Positions 21,875 to 48,180 are shown, counted from the first letter of the stretch. The stretch: DNA of 64,000 nt from IMGVR_UViG_3300049846_000628:62001-126000; one strand, 5' to 3'. A program made the numbers and translations. The notes: generated by a model from the letters alone, not told the origin.

Positions 21875-22306
21875 TTAATTAAATCCTGCCTGGAAACGAT
21901 GCCACTCAATAGCATTCTTGATTTGGTAGGTTCTATTGGAGATAGTCTTAATAACTTCTTCAAGGAACTTAAGCATAATGTCGTAGTAGCGAATCTTGAG
22001 ATCAAGTTTATTCAACCTCTCATCAGCGTCCATATGCCTCTGTAACGCTTCTTTGTCTCTAACTTTATACGGAAATGGTTCTTCTTCGTAGACCTCTATT
22101 GGTGCCTTTCCTGTGTAGTAGTTGTGGCGCTCTAATTTTGTTTTGTTGTATGCTTCTCTAGCCTTTTCTCTCAGTAGCGTAATAGTATTGTAGATTGTAT
22201 AATACTTTGCGTGAAGTTGAGGAATTTTTAAAGATTCATCGTGTAAATTATCAGGATCTATAACAGAATCTCTCTGCCACATCTCCTGGATTTCATCAAG
22301 ATTCAT
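21875..22306 (-). CDS. uvsY: Recombination mediator UvsY
   Basis: IPQLHAKY, YYTGKA and RTYQIKNAIEW; directly upstream of uvsW. Confidence 0.92.
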   Translation of the reverse strand: MNLDEIQEMWQRDSVIDPDNLHDESLKIPQLHAKYYTIYNTITLLREKAREAYNKTKLERHNYYTGKAPIEVYEEEPFPYKVRDKEALQRHMDADERLNKLDLKIRYYDIMLKFLEEVIKTISNRTYQIKNAIEWHRFQAGFN

Positions 22307-24373: not shown

Positions 24374-25534
24374 TCACTTTTTAGAAACTCTTTGGAGAGT
24401 CTGAAGATAGGCACCCATTGTGCCTCCAACTTCCTGAGCATTGCTCAGATCGGTTGACTCAGACAGATTTTCACTAGCGTTTCTTTGAGTACCAGCAGTT
24501 CTAGTTGAGAAATAAGATTCTCTTAGAGTTACCAGTTTCTCACGATAGCTCTCTTCACTATCAAACTCAACATTTTCGGCAAGAGAAGCGAGTTTGTCCT
24601 TCTGAGAAAGTGCGAGACCCTCAGCGACTTCTGCAAAGATTACATCAGCAACCGACTCTGCTAATCTTCTATTCAGAGCAACATTTCTTTGAATTTGCTC
24701 GTTGAGTTTTTCTTCCATTTCATCAAGTTTATCTACCATACTCTCGATAACATCATATCTATCTTCAGGGATTGTTACATAATGATCTTCAAAAAGACTC
24801 TTCATTCCTTGGAGGAATGATTCGGTCATTTCAGTCTTAAGACCGTGCTCAACTGCAAGTGCATTCTCTTGAATCCACTCGTCAGCAACATACTCAAGGT
24901 ATGCATCAACACGATCGGTAAGATTTTCTTTAATTGCTTCGATCTCTTCTACGAGAGCAGCAGCATACGACTCTTCGAGTTGCTCTTTAATTTCACCAAC
25001 TCTAGACTTGATTGCTGCTTCGAAGATAGTGCGTGCTTTCTCTTGGAATTCCTCAGAAAGCTCTTCACCAGCGAGAAGAGCATTAACATCTTCATCGATG
25101 TTGAACTCTTCTTCCATTTTCTTCTTACCTTTTTTCTTACCACCCTCTTCCTCTTCCTCTTCAGCAGCCTCAGCGACTACTTCCTCATCTTCATCAAGTT
25201 CTTCCTCATCGACAAGATCCTCATCCTCTTCAGTCTCTTCCTTAACACCTTGTCCAGGAAGTGAAACTGGAGTTGCTGATGAGTGTGGTGCTTCTGCAGC
25301 AGCTGCTTTAGCATTAACCACGTTTCTTACTTGAGCAAGAGTAGCTCCAGGAGTTTTGAGAGCAGCCGAATCGTCGTCTGGACGATAGTTTTCTGGAGTA
25401 GGACCACCTAAATCTTCCCAACCACCGGTTTGACCTGGAGTAATAGCTCCAGTACCAGAATGCATTGGTTCGGCAGGTGCTGCCCCTTTGGTTACTACGT
25501 TTTCCATTTCTTGTAAATTTCTACCAACGGACAT
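24374..25534 (-). CDS. gp22: Prohead core scaffold protein
   Basis: Glu-rich; FQEKARTIFEAA and YLEYVADEW; between gp21 and gp23. Confidence 0.93.
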   Translation of the reverse strand: MSVGRNLQEMENVVTKGAAPAEPMHSGTGAITPGQTGGWEDLGGPTPENYRPDDDSAALKTPGATLAQVRNVVNAKAAAAEAPHSSATPVSLPGQGVKEETEEDEDLVDEEELDEDEEVVAEAAEEEEEEGGKKKGKKKMEEEFNIDEDVNALLAGEELSEEFQEKARTIFEAAIKSRVGEIKEQLEESYAAALVEEIEAIKENLTDRVDAYLEYVADEWIQENALAVEHGLKTEMTESFLQGMKSLFEDHYVTIPEDRYDVIESMVDKLDEMEEKLNEQIQRNVALNRRLAESVADVIFAEVAEGLALSQKDKLASLAENVEFDSEESYREKLVTLRESYFSTRTAGTQRNASENLSESTDLSNAQEVGGTMGAYLQTLQRVSKK

Positions 25535-25574: not shown

Positions 25575-26225
25575 TTATAGATTTGAAAGAAACTCTTGGA
25601 ACAATTGAATTTTATGTTCCTGAAGTCTTTTTTCATCTACTAGAGTGTTAATTCTACGTTTTGCAGATTCTGCAAGTTTCTCACGAAGGATTCCACCTTC
25701 CCAAACCCACTCTTTTCCTTCCATAATTCCCTGAACAAAAGCGTCAGGAGCAGAAGGATCGGCAACGATATCTGCAGCAGTTGCTAGCATAAAATCTTCG
25801 CCAACAATTTTATGACCTTCATTGGTCATTTTGAGTGAACCAACACCACGAGAAGAAACACCAAGACAAACACCTTCACCAATAAGTGATTTTGCAATCT
25901 TACCCATTGGAGTTTCTAGAAGTTGTGCCTTACCTCTAAAATTTGTTCCATCTTGCTCAAGAGAAACAATTTTATGAGAAACACGGTCAAGGTTTACGGT
26001 TGGACCATCTGGGTGCCCAAGTTCTCCAAGAGCACGACCTTTGCAAACAAAAGTTTCGTTATATCTTTTTACTTCGCGTGAAAGAGTTTCCATTGGATAC
26101 ATTCTTCCATTGCGATTGCAAATATCACCCTGAAGGAATACTCCTTCAATGTACATTTTCCTTTGAGGTCCTTTTCCTTCGGTAACAAATTCTACCTTTT
26201 GAATTTCTTCTGTGATGAGTTTCAT
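25575..26225 (-). CDS. gp21: Prohead core protease
   Basis: NRNGRMY, GELGHP, GVSSRGVGS and DIVADPSAPDA. Confidence 0.97.
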   Translation of the reverse strand: MKLITEEIQKVEFVTEGKGPQRKMYIEGVFLQGDICNRNGRMYPMETLSREVKRYNETFVCKGRALGELGHPDGPTVNLDRVSHKIVSLEQDGTNFRGKAQLLETPMGKIAKSLIGEGVCLGVSSRGVGSLKMTNEGHKIVGEDFMLATAADIVADPSAPDAFVQGIMEGKEWVWEGGILREKLAESAKRRINTLVDEKRLQEHKIQLFQEFLSNL

Positions 26226-26229
26226 TTTT

Positions 26230-26760
26230 TTATTCGGAAACTAGTTGAACTACTTCTGTAACACTAACTCCAAGATTAGTATCTGGTGTATATGCAGAAA
26301 CTTTTACGCTTCTAACTAAATCAGCACCAGTTATATTTGGTGAAACAATTGAAGAACTATTGAAATTAATTGTAACTGATGAATCAGTTAACGACACAAT
26401 TGACTTATGTGTAGTATTAATTCCAGCAGTTGGAGCTCCTTCAATAGAAACATAATCAGTGCTTAAAAATGGATTACCTGCATTATTCTCAAAAATGAGA
26501 GTTGTAGTTGTTCCTGTAGTAATACCAGCTATTTTTTGCCTAGCAAGCCTTTCCTTTAAAACTTCAGCGGTGTATGTACCAACATGAAAATCATTTGTTG
26601 TCGCTACTGGATCATTTCCAACGACAACATAACAACCTACTCCAGAAGATGCAATAGAAACTCTAAGATAACCGCTTTTTAATGCAATAGGATTGCTAGT
26701 AGCAGCAACTCCAGGATTTGCAGATATTTTGTTTACATTTTGGATAATTTTTACAGCCAT
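26230..26760 (-). CDS. Hypothetical protein in the head cluster, probably structural
   Basis: 176 aa, beta-rich and Thr/Ser-rich; coupled to neighbours. Confidence 0.7.
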   Translation of the reverse strand: MAVKIIQNVNKISANPGVAATSNPIALKSGYLRVSIASSGVGCYVVVGNDPVATTNDFHVGTYTAEVLKERLARQKIAGITTGTTTTLIFENNAGNPFLSTDYVSIEGAPTAGINTTHKSIVSLTDSSVTINFNSSSIVSPNITGADLVRSVKVSAYTPDTNLGVSVTEVVQLVSE

Positions 26761-28676: not shown

Positions 28677-28683
28677 TATTTAG
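28677..28683 (-). promoter_or_regulatory. Late promoter variant CTAAATA
   Basis: Overlaps the gp19 stop, upstream of gp20. Confidence 0.55.
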
Positions 28684-29270
28684 TTGATATCAGAACCGCC
28701 TGCTGAAGAGGAGGTTCCTTTGATTGCTTCCCACCAGTGGACTTGCATTTCAACAGTGAACTCTTGAATAGAGTCTGTTCCATAATCAAGAGGCATTGAA
28801 CTGATGCTTGTTGGGAATAGATCATACATATGATAAGATCTTAAGATAGATCCATCACGGTTTAACTGGTGAACATAAGCATCTGCCTGATAAAGTGCTG
28901 GGTTTGTTTGTCCAGTGTTATCAGATAGTCTGTTGATATAGTTCATCCACTTTTCAAATGCCGATCTGATTGCGAAATCAGTGTCGTTGATAACGGTGAT
29001 AGTCCAAGATTCGAATGAACGGTCTCCTGCTACCTTTAAAGTTCTTCCTCTGAAAGATACTTCAAGAGAAGTAACGTTAGATGATGGGATAGCAGCTGCT
29101 TTTACAAGAAATCTTGATTTATCAAGAATTGCATTATCAACGCTAACTGCTGAAGGGAATGCTAATTCAACCTCAAAAAGGTTACTTCTAGCACCACCAC
29201 CGGTTAACTTGCTCTTGAAGTCAGTAATCTTCCTTAAAGGAATGTTGTTGATTTGTTCTCTGGTTGCCAT
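28680..29270 (-). CDS. gp19: Tail tube protein
   Basis: GGARSNLFEV, FRGRTLKVAGDRSFESWTITVIND; directly after gp18. Confidence 0.96.
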   Translation of the reverse strand: MATREQINNIPLRKITDFKSKLTGGGARSNLFEVELAFPSAVSVDNAILDKSRFLVKAAAIPSSNVTSLEVSFRGRTLKVAGDRSFESWTITVINDTDFAIRSAFEKWMNYINRLSDNTGQTNPALYQADAYVHQLNRDGSILRSYHMYDLFPTSISSMPLDYGTDSIQEFTVEMQVHWWEAIKGTSSSAGGSDIN

Positions 29271-31506: not shown

Positions 31507-33204
31507 TTACCTGTAATCCCACATATACGACCTATCACCGTATTCGTCTAAATTCCAAACTTCCATTGGTTTGTTTTCTGATGTAGCAGTTGCAAACATC
31601 CAACGATCTCCAGTACCATCCTCTATCAACATATCCATATCATCTAACCCATCAGAAATAAATCCAAATGGAGACATATCTTGTTCTATTTGATTTTTTT
31701 GCTCTTCATAAATTCTCTTACGGACATCATTATCCGTCATTTCTTTGAAATAATCCTGAGCAACTAACCAGGAGAAGATTACAAGACACATTGCTAGGTC
31801 ATCATTACAACCTTCTTCTGCCTCAAATGAATTATGTTTTTGTGCAAACGTTGTTAACTCTGAGATGATATCGTAATCAACAGTCAACAACTTATCATCC
31901 TCCAACAAAGTTTTAAGGTTAGAGCATCCTAACTTTTTAACAGCGGCGGTCATACGAACACCAAGCTGCGACTTTTTACCACTAAATCCAGATCCAACAA
32001 TCTGTCCAGCACGACCACGCATCGCACACATTAAAACATTATCATATTCAAGATCAAAATGTAGAATATTAGCAACCTGATCTCCAATATCATTAACTTC
32101 AACTAATAACCAAGCATCATTATATCCTTTTGCTACTTCGTGAATAATGCTTGGGAATAGCATTGGTTTGATTTCGTTGTTACGATATTTTGCTACTACT
32201 TTGTATGGAAAGTTAGTTATATCAAAAACAATAAATGCAGAGTAGTCATTTCCTAATCCACGAGCAACGTCAACGGTCATCAAATAGTTGTGCTCTTCTT
32301 TTGGATTTTCATAAACATCTAATCCGGCATTTCTCTTGATCGGATCTTCATATACAAGATTCCTCAGTTTTGATGGGTTGATGAGTGTATTAACCGATCC
32401 TAAAAATTCACATTCAAACTCAACTTTGAATTGTTGTTCGGAGGTGTTCGCAATCGTTTGTTCCTTCCACGCAGCGTCCCTTCCGGGCACTTCAGACCAA
32501 TGAACGTCTGTAGGTACATATTCGTTCTTGCCCCGTTCAGCGTCATGCCACATACGGTAGAAGTGATTCATACCGCGTGGTGTGGATACGATAATTACCT
32601 TCGTGCTCTGTCCAGAAGAAATAGTAGGATAAACAGAGGCAAAGAAGTCATCAGCAATGTGATTTGGGATGAAAGCGAACTCGTCAAGAAAGATGACATT
32701 ATAGGATCCGCCTCGGACAGCAGATGACGAAGTAGAGTTAGATGAAATTTTGGAGCCATTTTCTAGTTCTAGAGATCCTTTATTCCAAGATATAATACCC
32801 TGCTGCATCCATTTTGGTAAGTTTTCATAAGCAAGTTGTAATCTTCCAAGAAGATCTCTTGCCGTAGATGCTTTGTTTGCAAGAATAGCAATATTCACAT
32901 TATCATTGAATACTGCATAATGTAATAGATATGAAACACAAGTCGTAGACTTACCCGTCTGACGGGGCATCTTGCAAATATTAAATCTATTCTTATGGAA
33001 ATTATGAATCAGTTTCTCTTGAAACGGATACATCTCAAAAGGAACTAGACCGTGATCAAGAGACACGATCTTAATGTAGTTTCTTGCAAAATATACAGGA
33101 TCCTCTTTACACTTTAAGAACTCAATAATTTGCTCTTCAGTAAACTCTATAGGGGTATTTGCCTTTTTAAGTAAAGGATTGCCCAAATATACATCATTAG
33201 ACAT
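31507..33204 (-). CDS. gp17: Terminase large subunit
   Basis: PRQTGKST, IFLDEFAF, STPRG, VDVARG and NDDLAM. Confidence 0.98.
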   Translation of the reverse strand: MSNDVYLGNPLLKKANTPIEFTEEQIIEFLKCKEDPVYFARNYIKIVSLDHGLVPFEMYPFQEKLIHNFHKNRFNICKMPRQTGKSTTCVSYLLHYAVFNDNVNIAILANKASTARDLLGRLQLAYENLPKWMQQGIISWNKGSLELENGSKISSNSTSSSAVRGGSYNVIFLDEFAFIPNHIADDFFASVYPTISSGQSTKVIIVSTPRGMNHFYRMWHDAERGKNEYVPTDVHWSEVPGRDAAWKEQTIANTSEQQFKVEFECEFLGSVNTLINPSKLRNLVYEDPIKRNAGLDVYENPKEEHNYLMTVDVARGLGNDYSAFIVFDITNFPYKVVAKYRNNEIKPMLFPSIIHEVAKGYNDAWLLVEVNDIGDQVANILHFDLEYDNVLMCAMRGRAGQIVGSGFSGKKSQLGVRMTAAVKKLGCSNLKTLLEDDKLLTVDYDIISELTTFAQKHNSFEAEEGCNDDLAMCLVIFSWLVAQDYFKEMTDNDVRKRIYEEQKNQIEQDMSPFGFISDGLDDMDMLIEDGTGDRWMFATATSENKPMEVWNLDEYGDRSYMWDYR

Positions 33205-33210: not shown

Positions 33211-34485
33211 TTACCTCTGTTCCAACCAGTTCATAATTGCAAGTGCTGCTTTGTTAGCGTTAGGTGAGGCACATACAAGAGTGTAAATATCACTAATTGT
33301 TCCAATACCACTTCTACCAACTTGTAGTTGTGCTTTATCGTCAATGACTACCTGACTTCCACCACCACCAACAACAAATCCACTTAAAAGAACTCTTCCA
33401 CCAGTGAAAGAAGTTGCAGTGGTATCATATTGAGTAATTGCATCTGAGTTTGCGTGATCAGTAAATGCTGCACCGACTAGAGTTGGATTTTCAATCAATC
33501 TCCAGAATACATTGGTGTTATCATTAGTAGATACTTGTAGTGATCTTGGTAGAACAACGCCAGATAATGAATTTGATTTAAGACGAATACTGAGAACTGG
33601 ATAATAAGTATTTGCAACAGTCATCGTAGTTCCACTAAGAGCATTACCTTGACTGACGAGAGTTCCAAGTTTTTCTGGTTCTCCTTCCTGAATAAGAGAA
33701 TTGGAACCCTGATATAAGTAATGAGTTCCTGCAACACCAGTTACATTTTCAATTTCACAACGAATTGGTAGGAACGGAGTAGAACACCAAACATATGGAT
33801 TGGTATTTGCATTATCAAAAGTATGACTATGAATAGTCTCATTCTTCATCAACCAATTGAACTGAACAATTCCAGCACCATACCATTCATAGTTAATTGA
33901 AATCATTTGTTGTTTTGTTGGATCTGCAACAACTCCTGTATATCCATCACCACCAAACTTTTCACCATTCCAATTATCTCTGGTTACTCTAGTTTCTGTA
34001 GTAATTCCAGATGTGCTACTGCGAATTACATATGAATATGTTCCACCATCGTCCTCAAAGTAAGCACCATTATACTCATCAAATATTCCAAATCTTCTGC
34101 AAATACCTACTTTTGGTGCTTCAAGACGAATTGCAAATGCAAGAGTTGCACCTCTACCAGGAATATATCTCATTACAGTCCTAGTTTGACGAATGACTTT
34201 ACTTCCTGCAGTAGAACCAACTTGCATCACAACATTACTAGATGCTGGATCGTGGGTTGCAGTTCCTACTCCAACTACTCTCTCATCCCATACATCAGTC
34301 TCTTTTCCATACTGGAAAGTGTTGAAGAATACTGTTTGGAATGGAGCAACTTTGAGTCTGTTGTTATTAGAAAACTGAGGTCTCCAGTCCGTCTGGTTTC
34401 CCCAGTGATCTGCAATATTATAAACTTCAAATAAAGTTCTTTCTTGATTTAAATAATCTTGTTCATTCTTATTCCACTGTGCCAT
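33211..34485 (-). CDS. Hypothetical beta-rich protein in the gp16-gp17 interval
   Basis: 424 aa, rich in aromatic residues, Gly and Thr; carries the GVGT/GITT motif seen in virion proteins here. Confidence 0.7.
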   Translation of the reverse strand: MAQWNKNEQDYLNQERTLFEVYNIADHWGNQTDWRPQFSNNNRLKVAPFQTVFFNTFQYGKETDVWDERVVGVGTATHDPASSNVVMQVGSTAGSKVIRQTRTVMRYIPGRGATLAFAIRLEAPKVGICRRFGIFDEYNGAYFEDDGGTYSYVIRSSTSGITTETRVTRDNWNGEKFGGDGYTGVVADPTKQQMISINYEWYGAGIVQFNWLMKNETIHSHTFDNANTNPYVWCSTPFLPIRCEIENVTGVAGTHYLYQGSNSLIQEGEPEKLGTLVSQGNALSGTTMTVANTYYPVLSIRLKSNSLSGVVLPRSLQVSTNDNTNVFWRLIENPTLVGAAFTDHANSDAITQYDTTATSFTGGRVLLSGFVVGGGGSQVVIDDKAQLQVGRSGIGTISDIYTLVCASPNANKAALAIMNWLEQR

Positions 34486-34488: not shown

Positions 34489-34803
34489 TCAATCACTCCA
34501 AGTTAGGCTTTCTGGTCTGTATCTTTGTGCGTTTTTAATTTTGATAGAATCTGATGATAATGGATAAACATTATGAACAATTGCTCCAGGATATTCACCC
34601 TGAAGTTGTTCGGCAAGTGCATTTTTATCAATCATTTTACCTTCAACTTCCAATCGATATAGTTTTCCTTGCCAAACTACATCAGCAAGAAAAGATTCAC
34701 CGACTGGTTGCGATTGTGGTTCAGATCCATTGATATAAAGATTTCCGTTAAAGTCGCCAGCAATGTTGACGCTTTCTGATAGGAATTGTTTGAATGATTT
34801 CAT
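34489..34803 (-). CDS. Hypothetical protein with a capsid-targeting-sequence-like N-terminus
   Basis: Starts MKSFKQFLSE-S; 104 aa. Confidence 0.8.
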   Translation of the reverse strand: MKSFKQFLSESVNIAGDFNGNLYINGSEPQSQPVGESFLADVVWQGKLYRLEVEGKMIDKNALAEQLQGEYPGAIVHNVYPLSSDSIKIKNAQRYRPESLTWSD

Positions 34804-34804: not shown

Positions 34805-36409
34805 TTAGTTACAGTTCCAACGACGAAGGGCTTTGTTGATTCTGGAATCAGGGTCTCTTGCAGTTTCTGTAGATGTAAGTCTCTTTTTCATTCCAGACAT
34901 ACGTGAGCAAAATGATTTACGTCTTGATGCTCTTTTACCCGTTGGATTTTTTTCAGTCACTGCTGTTTGAAGTTTTGAACCAGGATTCTCGCGGCGATAA
35001 GCATTAACTGCTTTTTGACTCAAACCATCGGTCTTATCTTGACGATTGACCTTCTGCCAATCTTCATTCAAACCCATTTCTGCTCGCCAATTAGAAAATC
35101 CTTCCTTCTTAACGCAATTTGGAACCATTCTTTTTCCTTTCTTTTTCATTCCAATCTGCTCATATCCATCCCAGCAGTCCTCACTTACTTTCATTTCTCC
35201 ACTATCAACATAATCTGCTGCAGAATCTAAATAATCTGCTGCTTTAGTAATTTTGGATTGAACCCACGCCTCAATATTACCCTCACCTTTCATTTTTTTC
35301 TTTAATCTCTTCGCAGCAGCAATAATGGTTGAAATCTCAGAACGAGCCATTGAGTGTTCGTGATCATATGACTCTGGGAAATTTCCAGGATGCACAGTGG
35401 CGATATTATACTTTAGTTGATTTGTAGTTAGTGCAGGAGGCATTGAGAACATATCCCAATACTTTGCTCCATATTTGCACTCATCTCTCGTCTCGTCTTT
35501 TTTGCACTTTGGACAATATCTGATCATTTGAGTCTCCTCTGACTTAGTTCCCCAATTATCAGCACCAACCTTACGACACTTGACCAGTGCTCCAGATGCA
35601 TATGCACTTGGCCAAACGTCATATCTTGATTTTACTTTATTATAGCAGGCATCTTTTTTACCACTACCTTTGCCTGGTTTATCTTTTTGTGCCTCGTTAA
35701 TTTCCATTGCTTCCTTGATTCCTGGTTCTGCCTTTACATAATTAGGATCTTCTTTACCTTTAGCAAAAGTGGAAACCATTGTTGGTTTGGATCCACCCGT
35801 TTTTGCTTGTTGACCTGGATCTTTTTCTCTTTTCCTACGAACTGCTGATCTAATTAAAGATTCACCTTTTTTACCCTTTGCCTTTAGAGATGCTAATCTT
35901 GCACTACTAAAACATTTTGGTGTTTTAGTTTCTCCTGGTTCATTTGCACAAGGAGATCCATCTGCTTGAACCCATCCAGGTTTGCCTTCTTTAGAACGAG
36001 AACCCTTAAACCAATGATGGAGAGTTCCTTCACTTACATCTTTGAATTTTTTATGATGCTTTTTAGCATCCGCTTCCATTTTTTTCAAACGAGTGTAATA
36101 ATCTGGAATTTCATCAAGATGTTGTAACGCAATATCAGTTGCAAGATCTTTATCTTTAGTGTGTTCACGTTCAATGGGAATACCCATCTCAAGTTGTCTT
36201 TTTATGAAAGAAACTTCAAGACGATGCTTCTTTGCAATTTGTTCAACTGTTTTATGAGGTTTGACTTCGTGCATTTCTCTAAATGGAGACTTTGATTTAG
36301 TCTCTTCACCCCCTTGTCTTTTTTTACGAGCAGCACAATGAGCTTTCTGTGAGAATCCACTTGGACTATCACAGTTTATTGATCTTTTATACTTATCAGA
36401 CCAACTCAT
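34805..36409 (-). CDS. Basic multi-module protein (candidate polyprotein)
   Basis: 534 aa; about eight short Lys/Arg-rich modules, most with Cys pairs, separated by Glu-containing linkers. Confidence 0.8.
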   Translation of the reverse strand: MSWSDKYKRSINCDSPSGFSQKAHCAARKKRQGGEETKSKSPFREMHEVKPHKTVEQIAKKHRLEVSFIKRQLEMGIPIEREHTKDKDLATDIALQHLDEIPDYYTRLKKMEADAKKHHKKFKDVSEGTLHHWFKGSRSKEGKPGWVQADGSPCANEPGETKTPKCFSSARLASLKAKGKKGESLIRSAVRRKREKDPGQQAKTGGSKPTMVSTFAKGKEDPNYVKAEPGIKEAMEINEAQKDKPGKGSGKKDACYNKVKSRYDVWPSAYASGALVKCRKVGADNWGTKSEETQMIRYCPKCKKDETRDECKYGAKYWDMFSMPPALTTNQLKYNIATVHPGNFPESYDHEHSMARSEISTIIAAAKRLKKKMKGEGNIEAWVQSKITKAADYLDSAADYVDSGEMKVSEDCWDGYEQIGMKKKGKRMVPNCVKKEGFSNWRAEMGLNEDWQKVNRQDKTDGLSQKAVNAYRRENPGSKLQTAVTEKNPTGKRASRRKSFCSRMSGMKKRLTSTETARDPDSRINKALRRWNCN

Positions 36410-36421: not shown

Positions 36422-36844
36422 TTACTCTTTATTATTTAGAAAACCTTGTTTGAGTAGTTTTGAAAGTTCTGAAGTAGATCCAACAAATACTGCATTATTA
36501 GTAACATTATTGGTGGTTTTGACCGTATCTTCTTCAACGTCTTTAAGTTTCTTTTGAAGATCAATTAACTTATCCGTAACATCACCAACACTTTTAATGA
36601 GTTGTCCCGCTACTTCATATGCTCTTGGAGATCCACCCTCTCCTGCAAGCTCCATAATTCCATTAATTGCTTCTTGCCCTTTCTCTATTAAAGAATATAG
36701 ATTTGCTCTAGTATATTCATAATCTTTCTTTATATCATCATTCTGTATTGGAACAATGTCCAATTTATCAGCAGGTTTTTCTACCTCAACAATACTACTT
36801 TCAATATTGAAAGTATCATCTAATCCTTCATAATTTTTAGTCAT
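36422..36844 (-). CDS. gp16: Terminase small subunit
   Basis: DYEYTRANLYSLIEKGQEAI, PRAYEVAGQLIK and NNAVFVGSTSEL. Confidence 0.95.
   Translation of the reverse strand: MTKNYEGLDDTFNIESSIVEVEKPADKLDIVPIQNDDIKKDYEYTRANLYSLIEKGQEAINGIMELAGEGGSPRAYEVAGQLIKSVGDVTDKLIDLQKKLKDVEEDTVKTTNNVTNNAVFVGSTSELSKLLKQGFLNNKE
36433..36439 (-). promoter_or_regulatory. Late promoter variant CTAAATA inside the end of gp16
   Basis: About 24 nt upstream of the 534-aa ORF start. Confidence 0.45.
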
Positions 36845-40620: not shown

Positions 40621-40628
40621 TATTTATA
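40621..40628 (-). promoter_or_regulatory. T4-type late promoter TATAAATA
   Basis: Exact consensus upstream of the 113-aa ORF and neck genes. Confidence 0.75.
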
Positions 40629-40800: not shown

Positions 40801-40987
40801 TAATTAACTCCCTAAGTAAAAATTTAATTTCATCAATATCTTTTTTCATTTGATCTAATTCTCTTTTTTGAGAATCTCTATGATGTAAACTATTTACATA
40901 TTGATTATAAGAGTGAACATCGCAATTTACAATTGCACCTGTAGTTTCATCCCGATATAAATTGGGGTGTCCTTTAACTGGAATCAT
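40787..40987 (-). CDS. Small hypothetical protein with a C-terminal coiled coil
   Basis: 66 aa; ATGA overlap with the 2398-aa gene. Confidence 0.75.
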   Translation of the reverse strand: MIPVKGHPNLYRDETTGAIVNCDVHSYNQYVNSLHHRDSQKRELDQMKKDIDEIKFLLRELINESK

Positions 40988-43900
40988 CTGATAGCAATAC
41001 TCCTTAAATCTTTGAATCTTGGTGCGTATGCTTGATTAGTTCCAGACATTACGATTTTGATCGTGTATCCAGTAAACTCTCCAAGATTATTAGCAGTAAA
41101 GTCATACTCTAAGAATTGATTTTCCAAACTTGCAGGTACGAATGTATCTGGTAATCCACTATTATTAGCAGGATTGATCACATCAGGGTAACCATCTTGA
41201 TTTGCATCAATGGTGAGATTGTTATAACCAGGGAATAGTTCAAATGCTTGCTCAACTTCACTAGAGTCTGGTCTAATGAGACTGTAAAGAACTCTAAAGT
41301 CTGCTGATGCGTGTCTGTATGCACCTATGATCACTTTAAGAGTGGTTGCAGGTTGAGACAGTCTCACAGTGTTAGAGACGTATACTGCAGCGTGTGGATC
41401 GTCAATAAGTGAGTTAACTCTGTTATCTAAAATGTAATTTGAAACAGGGCTATTTAGTCTGCTGCTAAGAAGTTGTGCTGAACAATTCTTCCAGAAAATC
41501 ATTGGAGACAGATTGTTATCTGTCGTTGATAGATTTATCTTTGCAGTGAATGATTTATTTCTAAGCAGACCTCCAAGATAAGTTTGCTCATTAATGTTTG
41601 AACAAATAATTCTAGTTGAAGAAAGTTTATTTTCAACTCCAATCTCAACATCTTCATATCCTTGATCTTGGAAAGATACTTCCGAACCATCTACACTTGT
41701 TCCACTTACTGAGCGAATTTGTGCAGAAATTTCAGTCGCTGCTCCAGGGACTAGGGAAAGAATTTCTGGAATAATGTTATCATATTGAATATTTTCAGTA
41801 GATTGAACATTATTTCCACCACCAGCATATTCTGCATTAAATGATAGTTGTGGAGATGAAGCAAGACTTCCATCTGAACTTCTATTTATTGAATTTGAAT
41901 CAAAGTTTGATCTATCAAATTCAATATAGTAACTATCAATATCATTACCAGTATCACTAATATCGTGAGTCTTATTGATTCTTCTTAGAGAAACGCCACT
42001 TAATTCGTACTTATAAACAGTAGAACCTGATGGATGATCTAAGATGAGAGTAGAATCAACTCCTCTTGTAATTGTTGTTAACTGACCAACTCCAATGCTC
42101 TCATACTTTATGATTTCATTTTCAATCTTAATATAACCAGGATTAGAAGCACTAACTGCTACACCCTCAAAAGTTGTAAAGTTTGAAGTTGAAGCTACGC
42201 TAACTGAAGTTCCTGATGGTGAAAGTAATGCAGATAATGATGTTGGTGGAACATTAGATTCTACATCATATAAGGTTACCTTATTATTCGCGGCATACAT
42301 TCCGTGATCAAAATGATTTACCTTCATAAAGTTTCCATCATAAATTCCACCCACAGCAGTTGAGGACAGGATAGAAGTGCCTGCAACAGATATTGCAGTA
42401 CCATTATCATAATAAACTAATGTAGAAACTCCTACTGTAGTGAATGATGCTGCTTGAACATTTGAAAGATATAAAGTATCTACGCCGGTAATTCCTGTAA
42501 TGGTTATTCTAGCGTCATTTCCAGATGCTGGTGAAATATCAGATGTCTTAATTCCAACAACATCACCTACTGCATATCCATTACCACGAATGGTTGGTGT
42601 TACAGCAGTTATCACTCCATTGGTTGCAGTTACATTAAGTTTCAGTCCAGAACCACTACCAGAGATAGCATAAGTTCCTACATTTGAAGTTGTAGTGTAG
42701 TTTGTTCCACCAGTTGTAATCCCAACAGTAGCAACTGAACTTCCAGTTCCAACAATGTAACCATAATTATATGGTTTGATGACTTCTCCAACTTTTCTTC
42801 CAGTTGTGAGAATCCCAATCATATTACTATCAGTTGTAGTTGTTATACCAACAGCAAATCTTCTAGGTAATGTTGTGATTGGATTATTTGGAAGAGTTGG
42901 AACATATCCATTGCTCTGATTAAGAGTTGGATTGTGGAAAAGAACGCTTCCAGATGATGCTGTGAAGTCTGCTTTATACAGTTTGAATTTGAGATCTTGA
43001 TACTGATTTGCTGTCCAGATAGAACCGTTTTGTGACTTGAATAGACTTCCTATAGCAAATTGTCTTGTATAACGAACACTTTCGGCATCAGGTAGTGTTG
43101 CAGTATTTACAGTTCTTTCACCCATTTCTGCAATCCAAACTTCATATTTGTCGGATTGTGGTGCTAGAAGCACAATAGCATATTCTAATCCTGGAGCAAG
43201 ATAGATTGGATAATCAAATGTTACTTTAGTTGCTACAGTTGCATCTCTAGAAGTTTGAATTTGCTCTGGTTTTAAAGTAACTGGATTTCCAATAACAGTT
43301 CTAGTTGGAGTGCCTAGTTCAACAGTTCTAACTTCAACCGTTAATGGTGCATTGTTTGGATCCTTGCTAGCAAAATAGATATCAACAGCAGTCAAATATG
43401 CACCATTGGAATCATCATTTGGTGAATTTCCATTTGTATCTTCCAGACTACCACCCACTGAGAATGATTGTGCTAAAGGATCAACAAAGTAAATGTTAGT
43501 TGATGATGTAACTATTCTTTGTCTGGTTTCCCACCTTCCTTCTGCCTTATAAACTGTTTCTGCAGATGAAATTAAATTACTACCTGGTAGAGGAATTTGA
43601 TTAGTTGCACTTGAAGTTAGTTTATAAACTTTAGAACCAGTTGCAATTCTTACTGGAGGTGCTGGATTTGTATTAGGATCTCTTAAGAAGAATGCACCCT
43701 GAAGATCACCATAATTATCAGAAATCAATCTTACATCTTTTACATAAGCAATAGCTCCACTTGTGGAACCAACTAACTTCATACCAGTAACAACGTATCC
43801 AGAGTATAGACCTTGTGCTTCCTCACACAATGAATCAATATCAACGTTTAAAACCTTGGAGGTTGCACTATATGATGCTGGAATACTTTCACTCTTAACA

Positions 43901-46900
43901 TATGGGTTGATGTTATATGTTGATGATGGAGCACTAAATGGACCTTGCTTGTGATTTGGTGCAGCAACTCTGAACTGTATAAGTGGGGTGAATAAACCAG
44001 ACGCTGATGAAATCCATCCAGTAACTGTTTCACCTACAGAGAATGCTTTTGATGCTCCATAATTCTGTAGAGATGAATCGGTAGCAATTTCAATTAATTT
44101 TGGAACGAAATCAACTTGACTATTTCCATCCAAGAATTGATATATTCTTGTGAGTGGTTTTAAGTTAACTGCATTAAATGCGGTATTACGAGATCTCATA
44201 AAGAGTTCTGTGCCGCTAGCTAACAGTCTATCTTCAACACTAGTTCTGGTTTCAGATCCAACAATTGCCCAACGTCCAGTTGCTCTTAACCATACCCAGT
44301 TGGTTTGGTTGATATTTACATCATTAAGTCTGATGGTTCTTACCCAACTATCACTTGCTGGATTGAGTTTAACAGTTCCACTATAAGAAACAACGTGGAA
44401 TGGGTTAACATTTTCTACTTTGGTTGCTAGTGGTTGTTCAATCCATCCAATTGAATCATATTTTAATGTGATTACATCATTTGTTTTTTGTACATTAGGG
44501 TCATACAGTGCAAAGTTAGTGCTTAAATCTAATGTCTCATTTGTAAATGCTTGTGCAGATACAGGTAACAAATTAATACTATTTCTACTAATCTGAGGTC
44601 TTAATTCTGAATTTTCAGTATCTACCTCTACAGAAGAAGCTAAAACATTAATCAGATCAGTATTTTTAAAGTCATCAACGAAAAATCCTGTCTTAAATCT
44701 ATTAAATCCTTGAGCGTCTTGAACTTGAAGAGTTTGTGTATTAAGTTCAAGAAGAGATAGTGAAGTAACTCTTTCTAGATTTTCTACTCTATCTTCAATT
44801 AATCCAATATCACGCATCGTGTATCTTCTGTTATCTGCAAGAGAAACAGAAGCATCTTTTGGATTGTAAAGATATGGTGGAAGAGTGATAGTAGCAATCT
44901 CCATCACATCATCTGGTTTTGATGGTGCTTTTGGATCTATTGATGGAGTTCCTTGTAAAACTATAAAGTTACCTAACTTGTTAAGATATAGTTTATCAAT
45001 TCTTCCTAGATAATAACTATATCCGACCAGAGCACCTTCATTTGGTGAAAGAATTAGTTTTGGTTCTGTTCCAAAAGTTCTTGATGCAAAATCAAATGGT
45101 GAAGAAGTTGTTGATGTAAATGGTGCTACTCTTGGTCTGAAATCTAATGTGTCTGATGCTCTTTGATTATTTGCACCGATATTTGGAATATCCGACCCGT
45201 ATCTTTCAGCAGAATAACTATTAACGGTGAAGACATCTCCAGTATCACCAGAAGGTACTTCATAGTAATCAAATACTACCAACATTCTTCTTGTTGGTGC
45301 AGATTCTCCTGCGTTTCTTACAAGTCTTGAGTAATCGTAATATTGGTCCTTCTGACCCTTCTCAAGTCTAAACTTGCTTGTGATATTTTGATAGCTACCT
45401 GCGGTTATTGACTGTAACTGTGTAGTAATGTTAGATTCTTCAAATTTAATATTTTCTCCAGCAGTAAATCTGTTAGTGTTAAGATATACTATACCTAAAG
45501 TATTTGCTGATGGTTTTGATACAACTCTAGCAATCGCTTTGCTGGTTTCACCTAAAATATTCTCACCAATAATTGCGTTCGTATCAACATTAGAGATAGA
45601 ACTAAAAGTTAGAGTATCTAAAGATGGATTTGAGGTACTTAAAGATTCATAAACTGCTATGACGTTAGCAACGTCTGGATAGTTTAGAGAAATTTCTTCA
45701 TCTTGAACTCTCAGTCCGTAGAATTGATTATAGGATAATCCGTCATTAATTGACGTGCTTATTCCAGTTCCAGACTCTGGATATTTTGAATATACTACAC
45801 TAACAGTCTTGCTGCGGTTATATTGCTTTAGTTTGCTTTGAACATCACTCTTAACGAATGTTGCATTAATTGCTGCAATATTTTTATTTTGAATGTTTGA
45901 GAATATTACTTGATTATTTGAGATAGTTACTTTATCAGAAGTTAAATTCTCAGTAGTTCCATCAAAGTAATGGATAGAATATCTCTCTTCATCAAAAGGT
46001 TGGAATCTAGCTAAGGATGAAGTTATTCCAAGATCAAAGTTTCCTGTATTGACTGTAAGTGTGTTACTAGATGGAGTTAATACAGAATTAGACTGTGCGG
46101 TAAATGTTAATAAGGAATCGCTTAAATCTGTTGTAGAGATATTTGAATTTGGTAGTTGAGCATAAAGATATCCTTTATCCTCATTCCTAATCTTTGGTAC
46201 ACCAATTGAGAATGTAGTTGTTGTTTGTGATGTTGGAAGACCACCATGACATATTCCAGTTACGGAACTTACTCCAACAAGAGTCATTCTTGTTCCATCA
46301 GCAGATACTGATGCAACTCTGTTGTAGGTTTCCGTATTAAATCCTACTCTCTGGTATCTAATAATTGTATCTGAAGAAATACCTGAGAATGCTTTACCAG
46401 ATGCAGAAACTGAACCATTAGATTCAATTGTTATTATATCAGTTGGTGAAAATCCAAAGGCAGTTGCTTTATCTAATTGAGTATCTGCAACAAAAGCTGT
46501 TGAGAATCCAGAAACTGAGGTTGGTTGAAAAACAGACTTAATATCACTAGATGAGTATGTTCTAATTGACTTAATGGATCTTGGATATAGTTCCAAACCA
46601 TTAATTAAAATTTGCTCACCAACAATAAAAGTTCCAGAAGTTTGACGGATAGAAATAGTATCCGATCCAGAACCTGCAGAAGTTACATATCCACTTGCAC
46701 CGGTGCTTTTTCCTTTTACAAGGGAAGTTGCTGGAAGTTGTGCTGCAGAAACTCCTTGATTTAAAACTAATTCTGTGTATGTCTGGATATCATAAAGGTA
46801 TAAATCCCAGTTTGTAGATCCTCCAGTATACGCTGCATCAGTTACATTGAAAGAATATACTCTTGCATCTCCAATTTTTGTACCAGTTGTTGAGGTTGCA

Positions 46901-48180
46901 GATGCTTTTCTCTGATTGTAGAATTCAACAGATGCTTTTAATTTTGGTGCGCCAGAAATGTTGTTAATTCTAACCAGATTACCCATCTCAAATGGGATAT
47001 TTACATCAGATACAGATTGTGTAGTTCTTGGCTTGGGAACATCTACAATTTCTATACCTGTCTTTTCAATATCATAACCTCTAACATAAGCTTTTCCTGG
47101 TGAAAACTTAATGCACATTAAGTCATCTGATGGTGTATTTCCCTGCTCTGTTTTTTCATTGCTAAAATAAACACCATCATTTCCAAGTCTATTATTCAGA
47201 GAATTATTTAAAGAGAACTCAAATGGATCTACTACATAATCTCCAGACTCATCATAAGTTCTCTGAGCCAGATAATCTCTTATAACGGAATATTGTGACT
47301 TGTTTTCAACTTTCTTTATGCTTCCATCTTGAACTCTTAAAAGTTCTATGAAATTAGTATCAGTGGCGATATCAGTTAAAAGTTTTTTCTCTAAAACTAG
47401 AGAAATTTTAAATCTATCAGCACCAGGTGCAGCATAGTTTGTAAATCCTTTTGCATTATCATACAGTGATGGATCATCTTTCGCTGTAATAATTTGCTCA
47501 TCAACTCTCAAACCAACTCTGTATGATGGAGTATTGGTATAATAGTCTAATACGATTGTTTGCTTTGGAACTCTTACAAAGGTTCCTCTTACAAAATATA
47601 CTCCTTCCCCAATTGATGCAGCAGATCCTGTTGCTGTTGCACCATTTGTAATAGCCGTTGCAAAAGTAGTTCCTGCAGTTATAACATTTCCATTGTACTC
47701 TACGTTTTCACTAGCACTCAGTGCTTCTCCATCTTGGAACTCACTAAAAGTAAAGTCATTGTTAGAGTCTTGATACTTTACATATATTGTTGTATACTCT
47801 ACGTCCGAATTTGGGAGTTGAACTAATTGGATAGTGGCGGTTACCCCAGAAATGCTCCCTGTAATTTTTTTACCAACAAAATTATTAATATAATCAGAAA
47901 TATTAACACCAAATGCCGTTGGGTTTAACTTAACTGCATAAAATTGACCATCATAAACAATATTTCCGGGGATCACCATTGACCCCTCTTTGAATATATG
48001 ACTACCGAAGGATTCAACTTGATCCTGGAGTATTGACTGTAAAGTGTTTAGTTCCCTTGCTTGTACAGGTCTTCCAGGATTGAATAATACTTTATAATAG
48101 TTTTTATCTTTTGCGCCAATACCAGGCTCATTAAAATCATCATAATAAGGACTTACATTAAGATTAGTTTTCTGAGCCAT
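40984..48180 (-). CDS. Large virion structural protein (VrlC/DUF4815-like)
   Basis: N-terminus NLNVSPYYDDF...YKVLFNPGRPVQARELNTLQSILQ; RFKTGFFVDDF; DPLAQSF; follows gp8. Confidence 0.85.
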   Translation of the reverse strand: MAQKTNLNVSPYYDDFNEPGIGAKDKNYYKVLFNPGRPVQARELNTLQSILQDQVESFGSHIFKEGSMVIPGNIVYDGQFYAVKLNPTAFGVNISDYINNFVGKKITGSISGVTATIQLVQLPNSDVEYTTIYVKYQDSNNDFTFSEFQDGEALSASENVEYNGNVITAGTTFATAITNGATATGSAASIGEGVYFVRGTFVRVPKQTIVLDYYTNTPSYRVGLRVDEQIITAKDDPSLYDNAKGFTNYAAPGADRFKISLVLEKKLLTDIATDTNFIELLRVQDGSIKKVENKSQYSVIRDYLAQRTYDESGDYVVDPFEFSLNNSLNNRLGNDGVYFSNEKTEQGNTPSDDLMCIKFSPGKAYVRGYDIEKTGIEIVDVPKPRTTQSVSDVNIPFEMGNLVRINNISGAPKLKASVEFYNQRKASATSTTGTKIGDARVYSFNVTDAAYTGGSTNWDLYLYDIQTYTELVLNQGVSAAQLPATSLVKGKSTGASGYVTSAGSGSDTISIRQTSGTFIVGEQILINGLELYPRSIKSIRTYSSSDIKSVFQPTSVSGFSTAFVADTQLDKATAFGFSPTDIITIESNGSVSASGKAFSGISSDTIIRYQRVGFNTETYNRVASVSADGTRMTLVGVSSVTGICHGGLPTSQTTTTFSIGVPKIRNEDKGYLYAQLPNSNISTTDLSDSLLTFTAQSNSVLTPSSNTLTVNTGNFDLGITSSLARFQPFDEERYSIHYFDGTTENLTSDKVTISNNQVIFSNIQNKNIAAINATFVKSDVQSKLKQYNRSKTVSVVYSKYPESGTGISTSINDGLSYNQFYGLRVQDEEISLNYPDVANVIAVYESLSTSNPSLDTLTFSSISNVDTNAIIGENILGETSKAIARVVSKPSANTLGIVYLNTNRFTAGENIKFEESNITTQLQSITAGSYQNITSKFRLEKGQKDQYYDYSRLVRNAGESAPTRRMLVVFDYYEVPSGDTGDVFTVNSYSAERYGSDIPNIGANNQRASDTLDFRPRVAPFTSTTSSPFDFASRTFGTEPKLILSPNEGALVGYSYYLGRIDKLYLNKLGNFIVLQGTPSIDPKAPSKPDDVMEIATITLPPYLYNPKDASVSLADNRRYTMRDIGLIEDRVENLERVTSLSLLELNTQTLQVQDAQGFNRFKTGFFVDDFKNTDLINVLASSVEVDTENSELRPQISRNSINLLPVSAQAFTNETLDLSTNFALYDPNVQKTNDVITLKYDSIGWIEQPLATKVENVNPFHVVSYSGTVKLNPASDSWVRTIRLNDVNINQTNWVWLRATGRWAIVGSETRTSVEDRLLASGTELFMRSRNTAFNAVNLKPLTRIYQFLDGNSQVDFVPKLIEIATDSSLQNYGASKAFSVGETVTGWISSASGLFTPLIQFRVAAPNHKQGPFSAPSSTYNINPYVKSESIPASYSATSKVLNVDIDSLCEEAQGLYSGYVVTGMKLVGSTSGAIAYVKDVRLISDNYGDLQGAFFLRDPNTNPAPPVRIATGSKVYKLTSSATNQIPLPGSNLISSAETVYKAEGRWETRQRIVTSSTNIYFVDPLAQSFSVGGSLEDTNGNSPNDDSNGAYLTAVDIYFASKDPNNAPLTVEVRTVELGTPTRTVIGNPVTLKPEQIQTSRDATVATKVTFDYPIYLAPGLEYAIVLLAPQSDKYEVWIAEMGERTVNTATLPDAESVRYTRQFAIGSLFKSQNGSIWTANQYQDLKFKLYKADFTASSGSVLFHNPTLNQSNGYVPTLPNNPITTLPRRFAVGITTTTDSNMIGILTTGRKVGEVIKPYNYGYIVGTGSSVATVGITTGGTNYTTTSNVGTYAISGSGSGLKLNVTATNGVITAVTPTIRGNGYAVGDVVGIKTSDISPASGNDARITITGITGVDTLYLSNVQAASFTTVGVSTLVYYDNGTAISVAGTSILSSTAVGGIYDGNFMKVNHFDHGMYAANNKVTLYDVESNVPPTSLSALLSPSGTSVSVASTSNFTTFEGVAVSASNPGYIKIENEIIKYESIGVGQLTTITRGVDSTLILDHPSGSTVYKYELSGVSLRRINKTHDISDTGNDIDSYYIEFDRSNFDSNSINRSSDGSLASSPQLSFNAEYAGGGNNVQSTENIQYDNIIPEILSLVPGAATEISAQIRSVSGTSVDGSEVSFQDQGYEDVEIGVENKLSSTRIICSNINEQTYLGGLLRNKSFTAKINLSTTDNNLSPMIFWKNCSAQLLSSRLNSPVSNYILDNRVNSLIDDPHAAVYVSNTVRLSQPATTLKVIIGAYRHASADFRVLYSLIRPDSSEVEQAFELFPGYNNLTIDANQDGYPDVINPANNSGLPDTFVPASLENQFLEYDFTANNLGEFTGYTIKIVMSGTNQAYAPRFKDLRSIAIR

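What the first reader, a model, noticed from the sequence alone, without database searches (positions are those of the whole stretch)
34805..36409. 534-aa string of basic Cys-paired mini-domains separated by protease-like sites: a candidate polyprotein
Seen: distinct modules with Cys sets (C13/C25, C154/C166, C255/C278, C299/C302/C311, C412/C432, C501/C533) plus Cys-free modules (HTKDKDLA...DYYTRL; AWVQSKITKAADYL). Boundaries coincide with VSE127, IKE233/INE239, EE291-292, VSE410 and LNE449. I recall these modules occurring separately in other phage proteins. Inference: gp21 cuts this into about eight peptides that bind DNA or act in the host; polyprotein cargo is not a described T4 feature to my knowledge.
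Basis: partly seen in the sequence, partly recalled or inferred. Interest (0 to 1): 0.65.

Follow-up and report, generated by a model that had tools for sequence, protein, structure and literature searches.

The report
Cyanophage head-cargo polyprotein with protease sites
A 534-residue protein of a T4-like cyanophage looks like a string of small basic modules joined by prohead-protease cutting sites, so one gene probably loads several internal-protein-like cargoes into the capsid, though cutting has not been shown directly.

Summary
The ORF is real: 534 aa on the minus strand, in a T4-like cyanomyovirus, between the small and large terminase genes.

One sequence alone is not significant (7 sites against 4.4±1.9 in shuffles). 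Comparison is decisive:
- In 55 homologues, extra modules are inserted exactly at the named boundaries.
- 41 of 85 upstream and 61 of 85 downstream insertion junctions lie within 2 residues of a [LIVM]xE site (7.2±2.5 by chance).
- Sites are enriched in linkers and nearly absent from most module cores.
- 130 relatives show 53 module orders.

The last module (DUF6321) also exists as thousands of separate small genes. In myovirus-like contigs 89 of 120 carry a 10-residue leader like the T4 capsid targeting sequence. None of 120 podovirus copies do. Hydrophobic-x-Glu precedes this module in 118 of 118 polyproteins.

The phage encodes gp21 (Peptidase_S77). Homologues were detected in S-SM1 and S-SCSM1 virions by mass spectrometry.

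Best reading: a gp21-processed multi-cargo precursor, analogous to T4 internal proteins. Cleavage, targeting and module function remain inferred. I expect about six or seven products, not eight; EE291-292 is a module boundary but not a canonical site.

The parts
34805..36409 (-). Whole ORF, 534 aa (P0001). Member of cyanophage cluster T4-GC119, a 'structural protein' of unknown function.
36266..36409 (-). Module A, residues 1-48, with Cys13/Cys25. Ends in MHE48 (LKE in other members). Absent from about a third of homologues.
36029..36265 (-). Module B, residues 49-127, Pfam DUF5661, Cys-free and helical. Ends in VSE127. This site, or one within 8 residues, is present in essentially all 120 homologues.
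35711..36028 (-). Module C, residues 128-233 (phrog_12753-like), with Cys154/Cys166 and a basic helical tail. Ends in IKE233.
35693..35710 (-). Six-residue spacer, residues 234-239, between the twin sites IKE233 and INE239.
35534..35692 (-). Module D, residues 240-292 (phrog_38880-like), with Cys255/Cys278. Its end at residue 292 is an insertion hot spot but has no canonical site in this protein.
35375..35533 (-). Module Z, residues 293-345. CxxC...C knuckle with Cys299/302/311; the best-modelled island of the whole-protein model (pLDDT about 80). It sits at other places in S-SM1, RN05-S and S-SCSM1 relatives.
35180..35374 (-). Module E, residues 346-410, Cys-free two-helix unit. Ends in VSE410. 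The stretch after it is the hypervariable insertion zone (inserts up to 239 aa).
35063..35179 (-). Module W, residues 411-436 (CW..GY...NC hairpin, Cys412/Cys432), plus linker 437-449 (FSNWR...LNE449).
34808..35062 (-). Module F, residues 450-534, Pfam DUF6321, pI 11, Cys501/Cys533. Preceded by hydrophobic-x-Glu in 118 of 118 polyproteins. Exists as a stand-alone gene with a CTS leader in myoviruses and without one in podoviruses.
34489..34803 (-). Next gene downstream, 104 aa (phrog_1742). Its first ten residues, MKSFKQFLSE, fit the T4 capsid targeting sequence.
33211..34485 (-). 424-aa virion structural protein (phrog_1645), third gene of the insert between terS and terL.
36422..36844 (-). 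Terminase small subunit (gp16-like), 12 bp upstream of the polyprotein gene.
31507..33204 (-). Terminase large subunit (gp17-like).
25575..26225 (-). gp21 prohead protease (Peptidase_S77, E 8e-36), the proposed processing enzyme.
24374..25534 (-). gp22 scaffold, with more than 30 [LIVM]xE motifs, as expected of a gp21 substrate.
40621..40628 (-). Nearest upstream TATAAATA (T4 late-promoter-like box) on the coding strand. The polyprotein gene has none of its own.

Best explanation
The gene encodes a precursor made of seven to nine small, mostly basic modules. Six of them are braced by two or three conserved Cys. It is probably made late, together with the neck and terminase genes, and enters the prohead core. 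There the phage's gp21-type serine protease cuts it after Glu in hydrophobic-x-Glu sites that lie in the disordered linkers. For this protein the predicted cuts are after E48, E127, E233, E239, E410 and E449. The products would be about 5.5, 9.4, 11.4, 19.2, 4.6 and 9.8 kDa plus a 6-residue spacer. These stay with the packed DNA as internal-protein-like cargo and probably leave with it at infection. The gene evolves by gain, loss and reordering of modules.

Shown here: the modular build, site placement and conservation, shuffling, stand-alone versions with a T4-type capsid targeting leader, and gp21 in the same genome. From the literature: virion presence of homologues. Inferred: cleavage itself, the route into the prohead, ejection, and what each module does (DNA binding or anti-defence is a guess).
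For: 1. The context is a T4-like cyanomyovirus head, neck and terminase block. gp20, gp21 (Peptidase_S77), gp22 and gp23 lie in the same window.

2. In 55 homologues, extra modules are inserted after residues 125, 292, 409 and 435-445. The inserted modules are themselves flanked by [LIVM]xE.

3. Junction test on 85 inserted segments: 41 upstream and 61 downstream junctions lie within 2 aa of a site, against 7.2 +/- 2.5 at random positions.

4. Four of the six linker zones hold 1.4-3 times more sites than their own shuffles (A|B, B|C and C|D about threefold). Cores A, C, D, Z and E are depleted.

5. There are 53 module orders among 130 proteins, and modules W and Z change place.

6. Of 120 small DUF6321 proteins, 89 start with a 10-residue leader that has an aromatic or Leu at position 4, Phe/Tyr at 7, an aliphatic residue at 8 and Glu at 10. 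In 50 of them the leader abuts the module start. None of 120 podovirus-type copies has such a leader. These are the positions that decide targeting (4, 7) and processing (8, 10) in the T4 CTS MKTYQEFIAE (PMC9026906).

7. The triplet before the DUF6321 start is [LIVM]xE in 91 polyproteins and aromatic-x-E in 27, out of 118. The predicted mature N-terminus is therefore the same whatever precedes it.

8. Two other proteins of this phage carry the leader: the downstream 104-aa gene, and a cytidylyltransferase. Cytidylyltransferase homologues are found in cyanophage virions (PMC3037559; PMC10665884).

9. Homologues were detected in virions by mass spectrometry: S-SM1 T4-GC119 with 13 peptide counts and S-SCSM1 ORF29.

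10. The whole protein models with pTM 0.22 and low-confidence linkers. DUF6321 alone reaches pLDDT 79.8 and pTM 0.62.
Against: - There is no direct evidence of cleavage for any family member.
- The polyprotein N-terminus has no CTS (0 of 120), so its route into the prohead is unknown.
- The D|Z and Z|E boundaries lack canonical sites in this protein.
- B and F each contain a conserved internal [LIV]xE (LDE100, VTE486) that would have to be protected by folding.
- The Syn9 homologue gp114 was not detected in virions, and S-PM2 lacks the gene.
- The sequences compared are related, so the counts are not independent events.
- No module matches a fold or family of known function.
- The gp21-linker complex prediction gave no answer.
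Confidence: 0.6

Rival explanations
1. It is an intact multi-domain virion protein, for example a DNA-organising internal protein or a neck or tail accessory, that is not cut. The hydrophobic-x-Glu motifs are leftovers of the leaders of once separate genes that became fused.
For: There are no cleavage data. Some boundaries (D|Z, Z|E) lack sites. Internal CTS-like strings such as K[ST]F..F.E in 28 of 120 members look like fusion scars. Mass spectrometry detected the protein but reported no size.
Against: Scars would decay. Instead the site before DUF6321 is kept in 118 of 118 members, the P2 residue varies freely while P3 and P1 are held, and sites are depleted inside most module cores (A, C, D, Z, E). 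T4 gp21 needs only a short L/I-X-E motif (PMC9026906), so such linkers would probably be cut if the protein is in the core.
Confidence: 0.15
2. It is a prohead-core or scaffold accessory, comparable to T4 gp67/gp68 or gp22. It is cut into pieces that mostly leave the head before DNA packaging, so the modules serve assembly and are not delivered.
For: It has many gp21-type sites, like gp22 of the same phage. The gene lies among head, neck and packaging genes. DUF5661 occurs inside a DUF2213 protein in Vibrio phage VPs20; reading that protein as a prohead protease/scaffold rests on my own knowledge.
Against: The protein is basic with Cys-braced folded modules, not an acidic coiled coil. Homologues persist in mature virions. 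Module content is hypervariable and the gene is missing from S-PM2, which is unlike an essential scaffold part. DUF6321 is also kept by podoviruses whose copies carry no leader.
Confidence: 0.15
3. It is a non-virion late protein that binds DNA and helps terminase or DNA condensation in the cell. Virion detection would then be carry-over.
For: It lies between terS and terL, 12 bp after terS, and is very basic. Authors of cyanophage proteomes note possible carry-over of abundant proteins (PMC10665884).
Against: It was detected in two independent virion proteomes. Stand-alone modules carry capsid targeting leaders. In P-SSM7 and in contigs L015 and L016 the family is not next to terminase genes.
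Confidence: 0.05

Closest known systems
T4 internal proteins IPI, IPII, IPIII (and Alt): CTS-led, gp21-processed head cargo
   Same: Small basic proteins held in the head with the DNA. A 10-residue N-terminal leader has targeting residues at positions 4 and 7 and processing residues at 8 and 10. Cleavage is after L/I-X-E. The gene content is highly variable between related phages (PMC9026906; PMC3012670). Stand-alone versions of the modules here have just such a leader.
   Different: Here several such units are joined in one ORF with internal sites, and the ORF's own N-terminus has no CTS. No T4 internal-protein family appeared among the Pfam or PHROG hits. Most modules are braced by Cys pairs. 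Ejection and function are untested.
T4 prohead core proteins gp22, gp67, gp68
   Same: One polypeptide is cut at several gp21 sites into small peptides, some of which stay in the head (PMC9026906, Table 1).
   Different: Those are assembly scaffolds and are conserved. gp22 of this phage is a separate gene. The present protein is basic, modular, shuffled and dispensable in some phages.
Inner-body and ejection proteins of giant phages phiKZ, 201phi2-1 and SPN3US
   Same: Many head-internal proteins are cut after Glu at short motifs by a diverged gp21 homologue. Redundant sites occur in propeptides, and the cargo enters the host (PMC9026906).
   Different: Those are separate genes from which a propeptide is removed from a mature part. 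They are not strings of independent mature modules, and the motif is S/A-X-E.
Cyanophage cluster T4-GC119 and Pfam DUF5661 / DUF6321
   Same: This protein is a member. DUF5661 scores 54.9 bits and DUF6321 57 bits, both above the gathering cut-offs. It is homologous to S-SM1 SSM1_115, P-SSM2_123 and P-SSM7_194.
   Different: The literature records only 'structural protein' or 'hypothetical' (PMC3037559). I found no description of the polyprotein build, the sites or the CTS link.
Polyproteins of RNA viruses and retroviruses (e.g. Gag)
   Same: One ORF, a virus-coded protease, cleavage during particle maturation, and products that stay inside the particle.
   Different: There is no homology. Here the modules are accessory cargo and vary combinatorially between close relatives.

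Membership tests
T4-type CTS-targeted internal proteins | N-terminal ~10-residue capsid targeting sequence (aromatic at positions 4 and 7, aliphatic at 8, Glu at 10) | tested here: not met
   The polyprotein starts MSWSDKYK. None of 120 family members has a CTS-like N-terminus. The feature is met by stand-alone module genes (89 of 120) and by the downstream 104-aa gene.
T4-type CTS-targeted internal proteins | gp21 cleavage motif L/I-X-E at the leader or mature junction | tested here: met
   Sites end at E127, E233, E239, E410 and E449 (plus MHE48). They are conserved and enriched at module junctions.
T4-type CTS-targeted internal proteins | gp21 (Peptidase_S77) prohead protease encoded by the same phage | tested here: met
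   window:25575-26225(-) matches PF03420 at E 8.1e-36 and phrog_207 at E 9.8e-81.
T4-type CTS-targeted internal proteins | Presence in mature virions | not testable with these tools
   Literature on homologues only: S-SM1 T4-GC119 was detected with 13 counts (PMC3037559 Table S8) and S-SCSM1 ORF29 was detected (PMC9602691). Syn9 gp114 was not detected.
T4-type CTS-targeted internal proteins | Demonstrated cleavage by gp21 and ejection into the host | not testable with these tools
   No peptide-level or gel data were found. The complex prediction gave no answer.
T4-type CTS-targeted internal proteins | Sequence homology to IPI, IPII or IPIII | tested here: not met
   Pfam (E up to 1) and PHROGs (E up to 0.1) returned only families of unknown function. 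PDB sequence searches found nothing.
Pfam DUF5661 / DUF6321 | Domain score above the Pfam gathering cut-off | tested here: met
   DUF5661 scores 54.9 bits (cut-off 27) at residues 56-112. DUF6321 scores 57 bits (cut-off 28.5) at residues 457-531.
Cyanophage T4-GC119 virion structural protein | Homology to S-SM1 SSM1_115, P-SSM2_123 or P-SSM7_194, usually next to gp16 | tested here: met
   tblastn matched 511 phage records, nearly all cyanophages. The locus sits beside terS here and in S-SRM01, S-SM1, Syn9, S-CAM1 and P-SSM2.
Prohead scaffold/core (gp22, gp67, gp68) | Homology to a scaffold family, or acidic coiled-coil character | tested here: not met
   There was no scaffold PHROG hit. The pI is 9.65, and gp22 is a separate gene.
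Viral polyprotein (functional class) | Its parts also exist as independent proteins | tested here: met
   DUF6321 stands alone in 4086 small proteins. DUF5661 stands alone in Caulobacter phage Cr30. Z+F and W+F two-module genes exist. A split arrangement is seen in contig L016.
Viral polyprotein (functional class) | Proteolytic release of the parts | not testable with these tools
   Inferred from site placement only.

The most novel reading that the evidence does not exclude
T4-like cyanophages and related marine myoviruses load their capsids with a combinatorial set of small Cys-braced basic proteins. These are made either as single genes with a T4-type capsid targeting leader or joined into one gp21-processed polyprotein. 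If so, this would be the first cargo polyprotein described for a tailed phage and the long-missing cyanophage counterpart of the T4 internal proteins. Module shuffling would be driven by the contest with host defences.
Probability: 0.45. Interest if true: 0.8.

Novelty: new variant of a known kind. Interest (0 to 1): 0.68.

Why it matters
T4-like cyanophages are among the most abundant viruses in the sea. It has been known only as a 'hypothetical' or 'structural' protein.

If the reading holds, it does three things:
- It identifies the internal-protein system of cyanomyoviruses.
- It explains how non-structural enzymes such as the cytidylyltransferase get into cyanophage virions, namely through a T4-type leader.
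- It shows a new way for a tailed phage to package many cargo proteins in fixed ratio from one gene.

It also yields a simple sequence rule for predicting encapsidated proteins in marine phage genomes: the leader plus hydrophobic-x-Glu. The question becomes directly testable by semi-specific virion peptidomics.

Tried and rejected
- Single-sequence motif count: not significant. The case rests on comparison between homologues.
- PDB sequence searches with the whole protein and with parts: nothing.
- Fold search with the DUF6321 model: Foldseek found no match, and the best VIA-align Z was 3.2, which is noise for a helical model.
- ESM Atlas look-ups: only DUF6321 clusters came back. Weak leads to DUF5872 and DUF192 were not confirmed by Pfam.
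- Complex prediction of gp21 with linker residues 105-150: no answer, so it is evidence neither way.
- Literature searches for the two DUF names and for a cyanophage polyprotein or CTS: nothing relevant. The one 'polyprotein' phage paper concerns a replicase fusion.
- Supplements of the S-SCSM1 paper: no peptide-level data for ORF29.
- The P-SCSP1u cryo-EM paper does not mention the podovirus DUF6321 protein.
- A late promoter for the gene itself: none. The nearest TATAAATA is about 4.2 kb upstream.
- Not used: the large representative search (not needed), the read tools, any other genetic code.

Full report
**What is there**

The coordinates hold one ORF on the minus strand, 534 aa, with an ATG at 36409 and its stop at 34805-34807. 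The protein is basic (pI 9.65).

The window is part of a complete 211-kb virus record. The neighbouring genes, all on the same strand, are those of a T4-like cyanomyovirus:
- gp13, gp14 and gp15
- terS (36422-36844)
- this gene
- a 104-aa gene and a 424-aa virion protein
- terL, sheath, tube and portal
- a DUF7243 gene
- gp21 protease (Peptidase_S77), gp22 scaffold and gp23 capsid protein

The closest isolate is the freshwater Synechococcus phage S-SRM01, at 65% identity with the same gene order. Pfam finds only DUF5661 (residues 56-112) and DUF6321 (residues 457-531). PHROGs finds 15 families of unknown function, each covering a different part of the protein.

**Is it more than chance?**

In this one sequence, no. 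There are 7 [LIV]xE against 4.4 +/- 1.9 in shuffles. The comparison with relatives decides the question.

I aligned 55 members of 448-773 aa. Their length differences come from whole blocks inserted after query residues 125, 292, 409 and 435-445. Both the resident and the inserted blocks end in [LIVM]xE. The middle residue varies freely, for example vse, vke, vte, ite, iee, vne and mke at the B|C junction.

The tests gave these results:
- Of 85 unique inserted segments, 41 upstream and 61 downstream junctions lie within two residues of such a site. Random positions in the same proteins give 7.2 +/- 2.5.
- Four of the six linker zones hold 1.4-3 times more sites than their own shuffles (A|B, B|C and C|D about threefold), while D|Z and Z|E show no excess.
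- Module cores A, C, D, Z and E hold almost none. Core E has 0.02 sites against 1.0 expected.

These sequences are related, so the counts are not independent events. The pattern is nonetheless consistent across every variable junction.

**Modules and shuffling**

Simple signatures for the modules give 53 different orders among 130 proteins. Two modules change place:
- The CW hairpin sits after module D in some members and after E in others.
- The CxxC...C module is first in S-SM1, central here, and near the C-terminus in RN05-S and S-SCSM1.

Single modules also occur elsewhere:
- DUF5661 is a 70-aa gene in the T4-like Caulobacter phage Cr30.
- DUF5661 forms part of a Flavobacterium phage protein.
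- DUF5661 lies inside the DUF2213 protein of Vibrio phage VPs20.
- DUF6321 is a separate gene right after the capsid gene of T7-like cyanopodoviruses, and also in a Pelagibacter phage.

The whole-protein AlphaFold model has pTM 0.22. It shows only islands of confidence, and the linkers score below 50. DUF6321 modelled alone gives pLDDT 79.8 and pTM 0.62. The protein is therefore not predicted to fold as one unit.

**The link to T4 head targeting**

T4 gp21 cuts after Glu in L/I-X-E. The T4 internal proteins enter the prohead through a 10-residue leader, MKTYQEFIAE. Residues 4 and 7 of that leader govern targeting, and residues 8 and 10 govern processing (PMC9026906; sequence in bioRxiv 10.1101/2021.01.19.427310).

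A search with DUF6321 alone returned 4086 small proteins. Many are 94-95 aa, that is, the module plus ten residues. The counts are:
- 89 of the best 120 start with a leader that has M at position 1, K/I at 2, F/L/Y at 4, F/Y at 7, I/L/V at 8 and E at 10.
- In 50 of them the leader abuts the DWQ start of the module.
- Others are leader + CW module + DUF6321.
- None of 120 podovirus-type copies has such a leader.
- In the polyproteins, the three residues before DWQ are [LIVM]xE in 91 and aromatic-x-E in 27, out of 118.

The predicted mature N-terminus is thus the same whether a leader or another module precedes it. About a quarter of the polyproteins even keep an internal leader-like string (K[ST]F..F.E) at that place. 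Most others have an FSNWR...hydrophobic-x-E linker.

The same leader heads two other proteins of this phage:
- The gene directly downstream starts MKSFKQFLSE.
- A cytidylyltransferase outside the window starts MKSFFQFIAE.

Cytidylyltransferases are repeatedly found in cyanophage virions (PMC3037559; PMC10665884). This is an independent sign that the leader marks packaged proteins in these phages.

**Virion presence**

The family is cluster T4-GC119 of Sullivan et al. 2010. It is listed there as 'Structural protein' and was detected in S-SM1 particles with 13 peptide counts. It was not detected in Syn9 and is absent from S-PM2. Gene sizes in that table range from 519 to nearly 3000 nt. S-SCSM1 ORF29, a homologue, is among the 45 proteins found in that virion by mass spectrometry. 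Neither study reports the size of the detected species.

**Most likely mechanism**

The gene has no late-promoter box of its own. All nine TATAAATA boxes in the window lie on the coding strand, and the nearest upstream one is at 40621-40628. The gene starts 12 bp after terS. Late co-expression with the neck and terminase genes is therefore likely.

I propose that the precursor joins the prohead core and is cut by gp21 at the linker sites. The predicted products are:

| Residues | Size | pI |
|---|---|---|
| 1-48 | 5.5 kDa | 9.6 |
| 49-127 | 9.4 kDa | 9.2 |
| 128-233 | 11.4 kDa | 10.0 |
| 234-239 | spacer | - |
| 240-410 | 19.2 kDa | 9.0 |
| 411-449 | 4.6 kDa | 8.7 |
| 450-534 | 9.8 kDa | 11.0 |

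That makes six proteins and a spacer, not eight, unless non-canonical sites such as KSE291 are also used. The conserved Cys pairs could form disulfides or bind metal in the particle; this is inference.

What the modules do is open. No fold or family of known function matched. By analogy with the T4 internal proteins, DNA association and action against host defences are the leading guesses.

The weakest step is entry into the prohead, because the precursor's own N-terminus is not a leader.

**Rivals**

- An uncut structural protein whose motifs are fusion scars. This fits the absence of cleavage data, but not the strict retention of the sites or their depletion inside most module cores (A, C, D, Z, E).
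- A core or scaffold accessory whose pieces are expelled. This fits the many sites, but not the basic folded modules, their persistence in virions, or the gene's dispensability.
- A cytoplasmic DNA-binding helper of packaging. This fits the position and the charge, but not the proteomes or the leaders on stand-alone modules.

**Comparison and novelty**

Functionally the protein resembles the T4 internal proteins and, in being cut many times, gp22, gp67 and gp68. The giant-phage inner-body proteins are a further parallel (PMC9026906).

It is a member of T4-GC119, with DUF5661 and DUF6321 domains. It is not a sequence relative of the T4 internal proteins, and as a whole protein it lacks their defining N-terminal leader.

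I found no paper that describes the polyprotein build, the sites or CTS-type leaders in cyanophages. I therefore rate it a new variant of a known kind.

**Limits**

The complex prediction of gp21 with a linker gave no answer.

Noticed in passing
window 34489-34803 (-): The 104-aa gene right after the polyprotein (phrog_1742) begins MKSFKQFLSE, a close fit to the T4 capsid targeting sequence. Its homologues in S-SCSM1 and RN05-S begin MKTFKQFMSE and MKSFQDFLQE. It is likely a single-module internal protein.
   Followed up: partly
outside the window: G000 C1 56315-57619 (-) = L019:1316-2620 (-): A 434-aa cytidylyltransferase (phrog_395, PF01467) begins MKSFFQFIAE. Such enzymes are found in cyanophage virions by mass spectrometry, and the leader would explain how they are packaged.
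   Followed up: partly
L015:2791-5288 and L016:2837-5285 (metagenomic myovirus-like contigs): A 720-737-aa protein with cytidylyltransferase-like and Zeta_toxin/AAA_33 domains lies directly upstream of a stand-alone CTS-DUF6321 gene. The L015 copy itself starts with a leader-like MKFKDFLIKE. In L016 a 377-aa W-C-D-E polyprotein with its own leader-like start lies two genes downstream of the DUF6321 gene, so the polyprotein is split there.
   Followed up: partly
window 26230-26760 (-): A 176-aa DUF7243 / phrog_682 gene lies between the portal and gp21, where T4 has the core genes 67 and 68. It ends in two [LIV]xE motifs.
   Followed up: no
window, nine sites: 5207, 14699, 15601, 19367, 25565, 26952, 31483, 40621, 49763: All nine TATAAATA boxes (T4 late-promoter-like) are on the minus, coding strand, several just upstream of late genes. 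The total count is not above chance (9 against 6.0 +/- 2.2), but the strand bias is complete.
   Followed up: no
window 40984-48180 (-): A 2398-aa ORF lies upstream of the neck genes. The syntenic S-SRM01 gene is annotated as a VriC (virulence-associated) protein. I did not examine it.
   Followed up: no
window 22303-22848 (-): A second tail-tube-like gene (phrog_45, 181 aa) lies just after the major capsid gene, apart from the main tube gene at 28680-29270.
   Followed up: no
L004:3467-4735 (Vibrio phage vB_VpaM_VPs20): DUF5661 is embedded between the DUF2213 domain and a C-terminal helical tail of one head-assembly protein, flanked by [LIV]xE motifs. This may be another way of carrying the module into a capsid.
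   Followed up: partly
homologues P0005, P0009, P0031, P0033, P0079, P0093 and S-SRM01 (insert after query residue ~409): Some inserted modules are Gly/Ala-rich hydrophobic stretches that look like membrane-spanning helices, which is unexpected for capsid-internal cargo.
   Followed up: no
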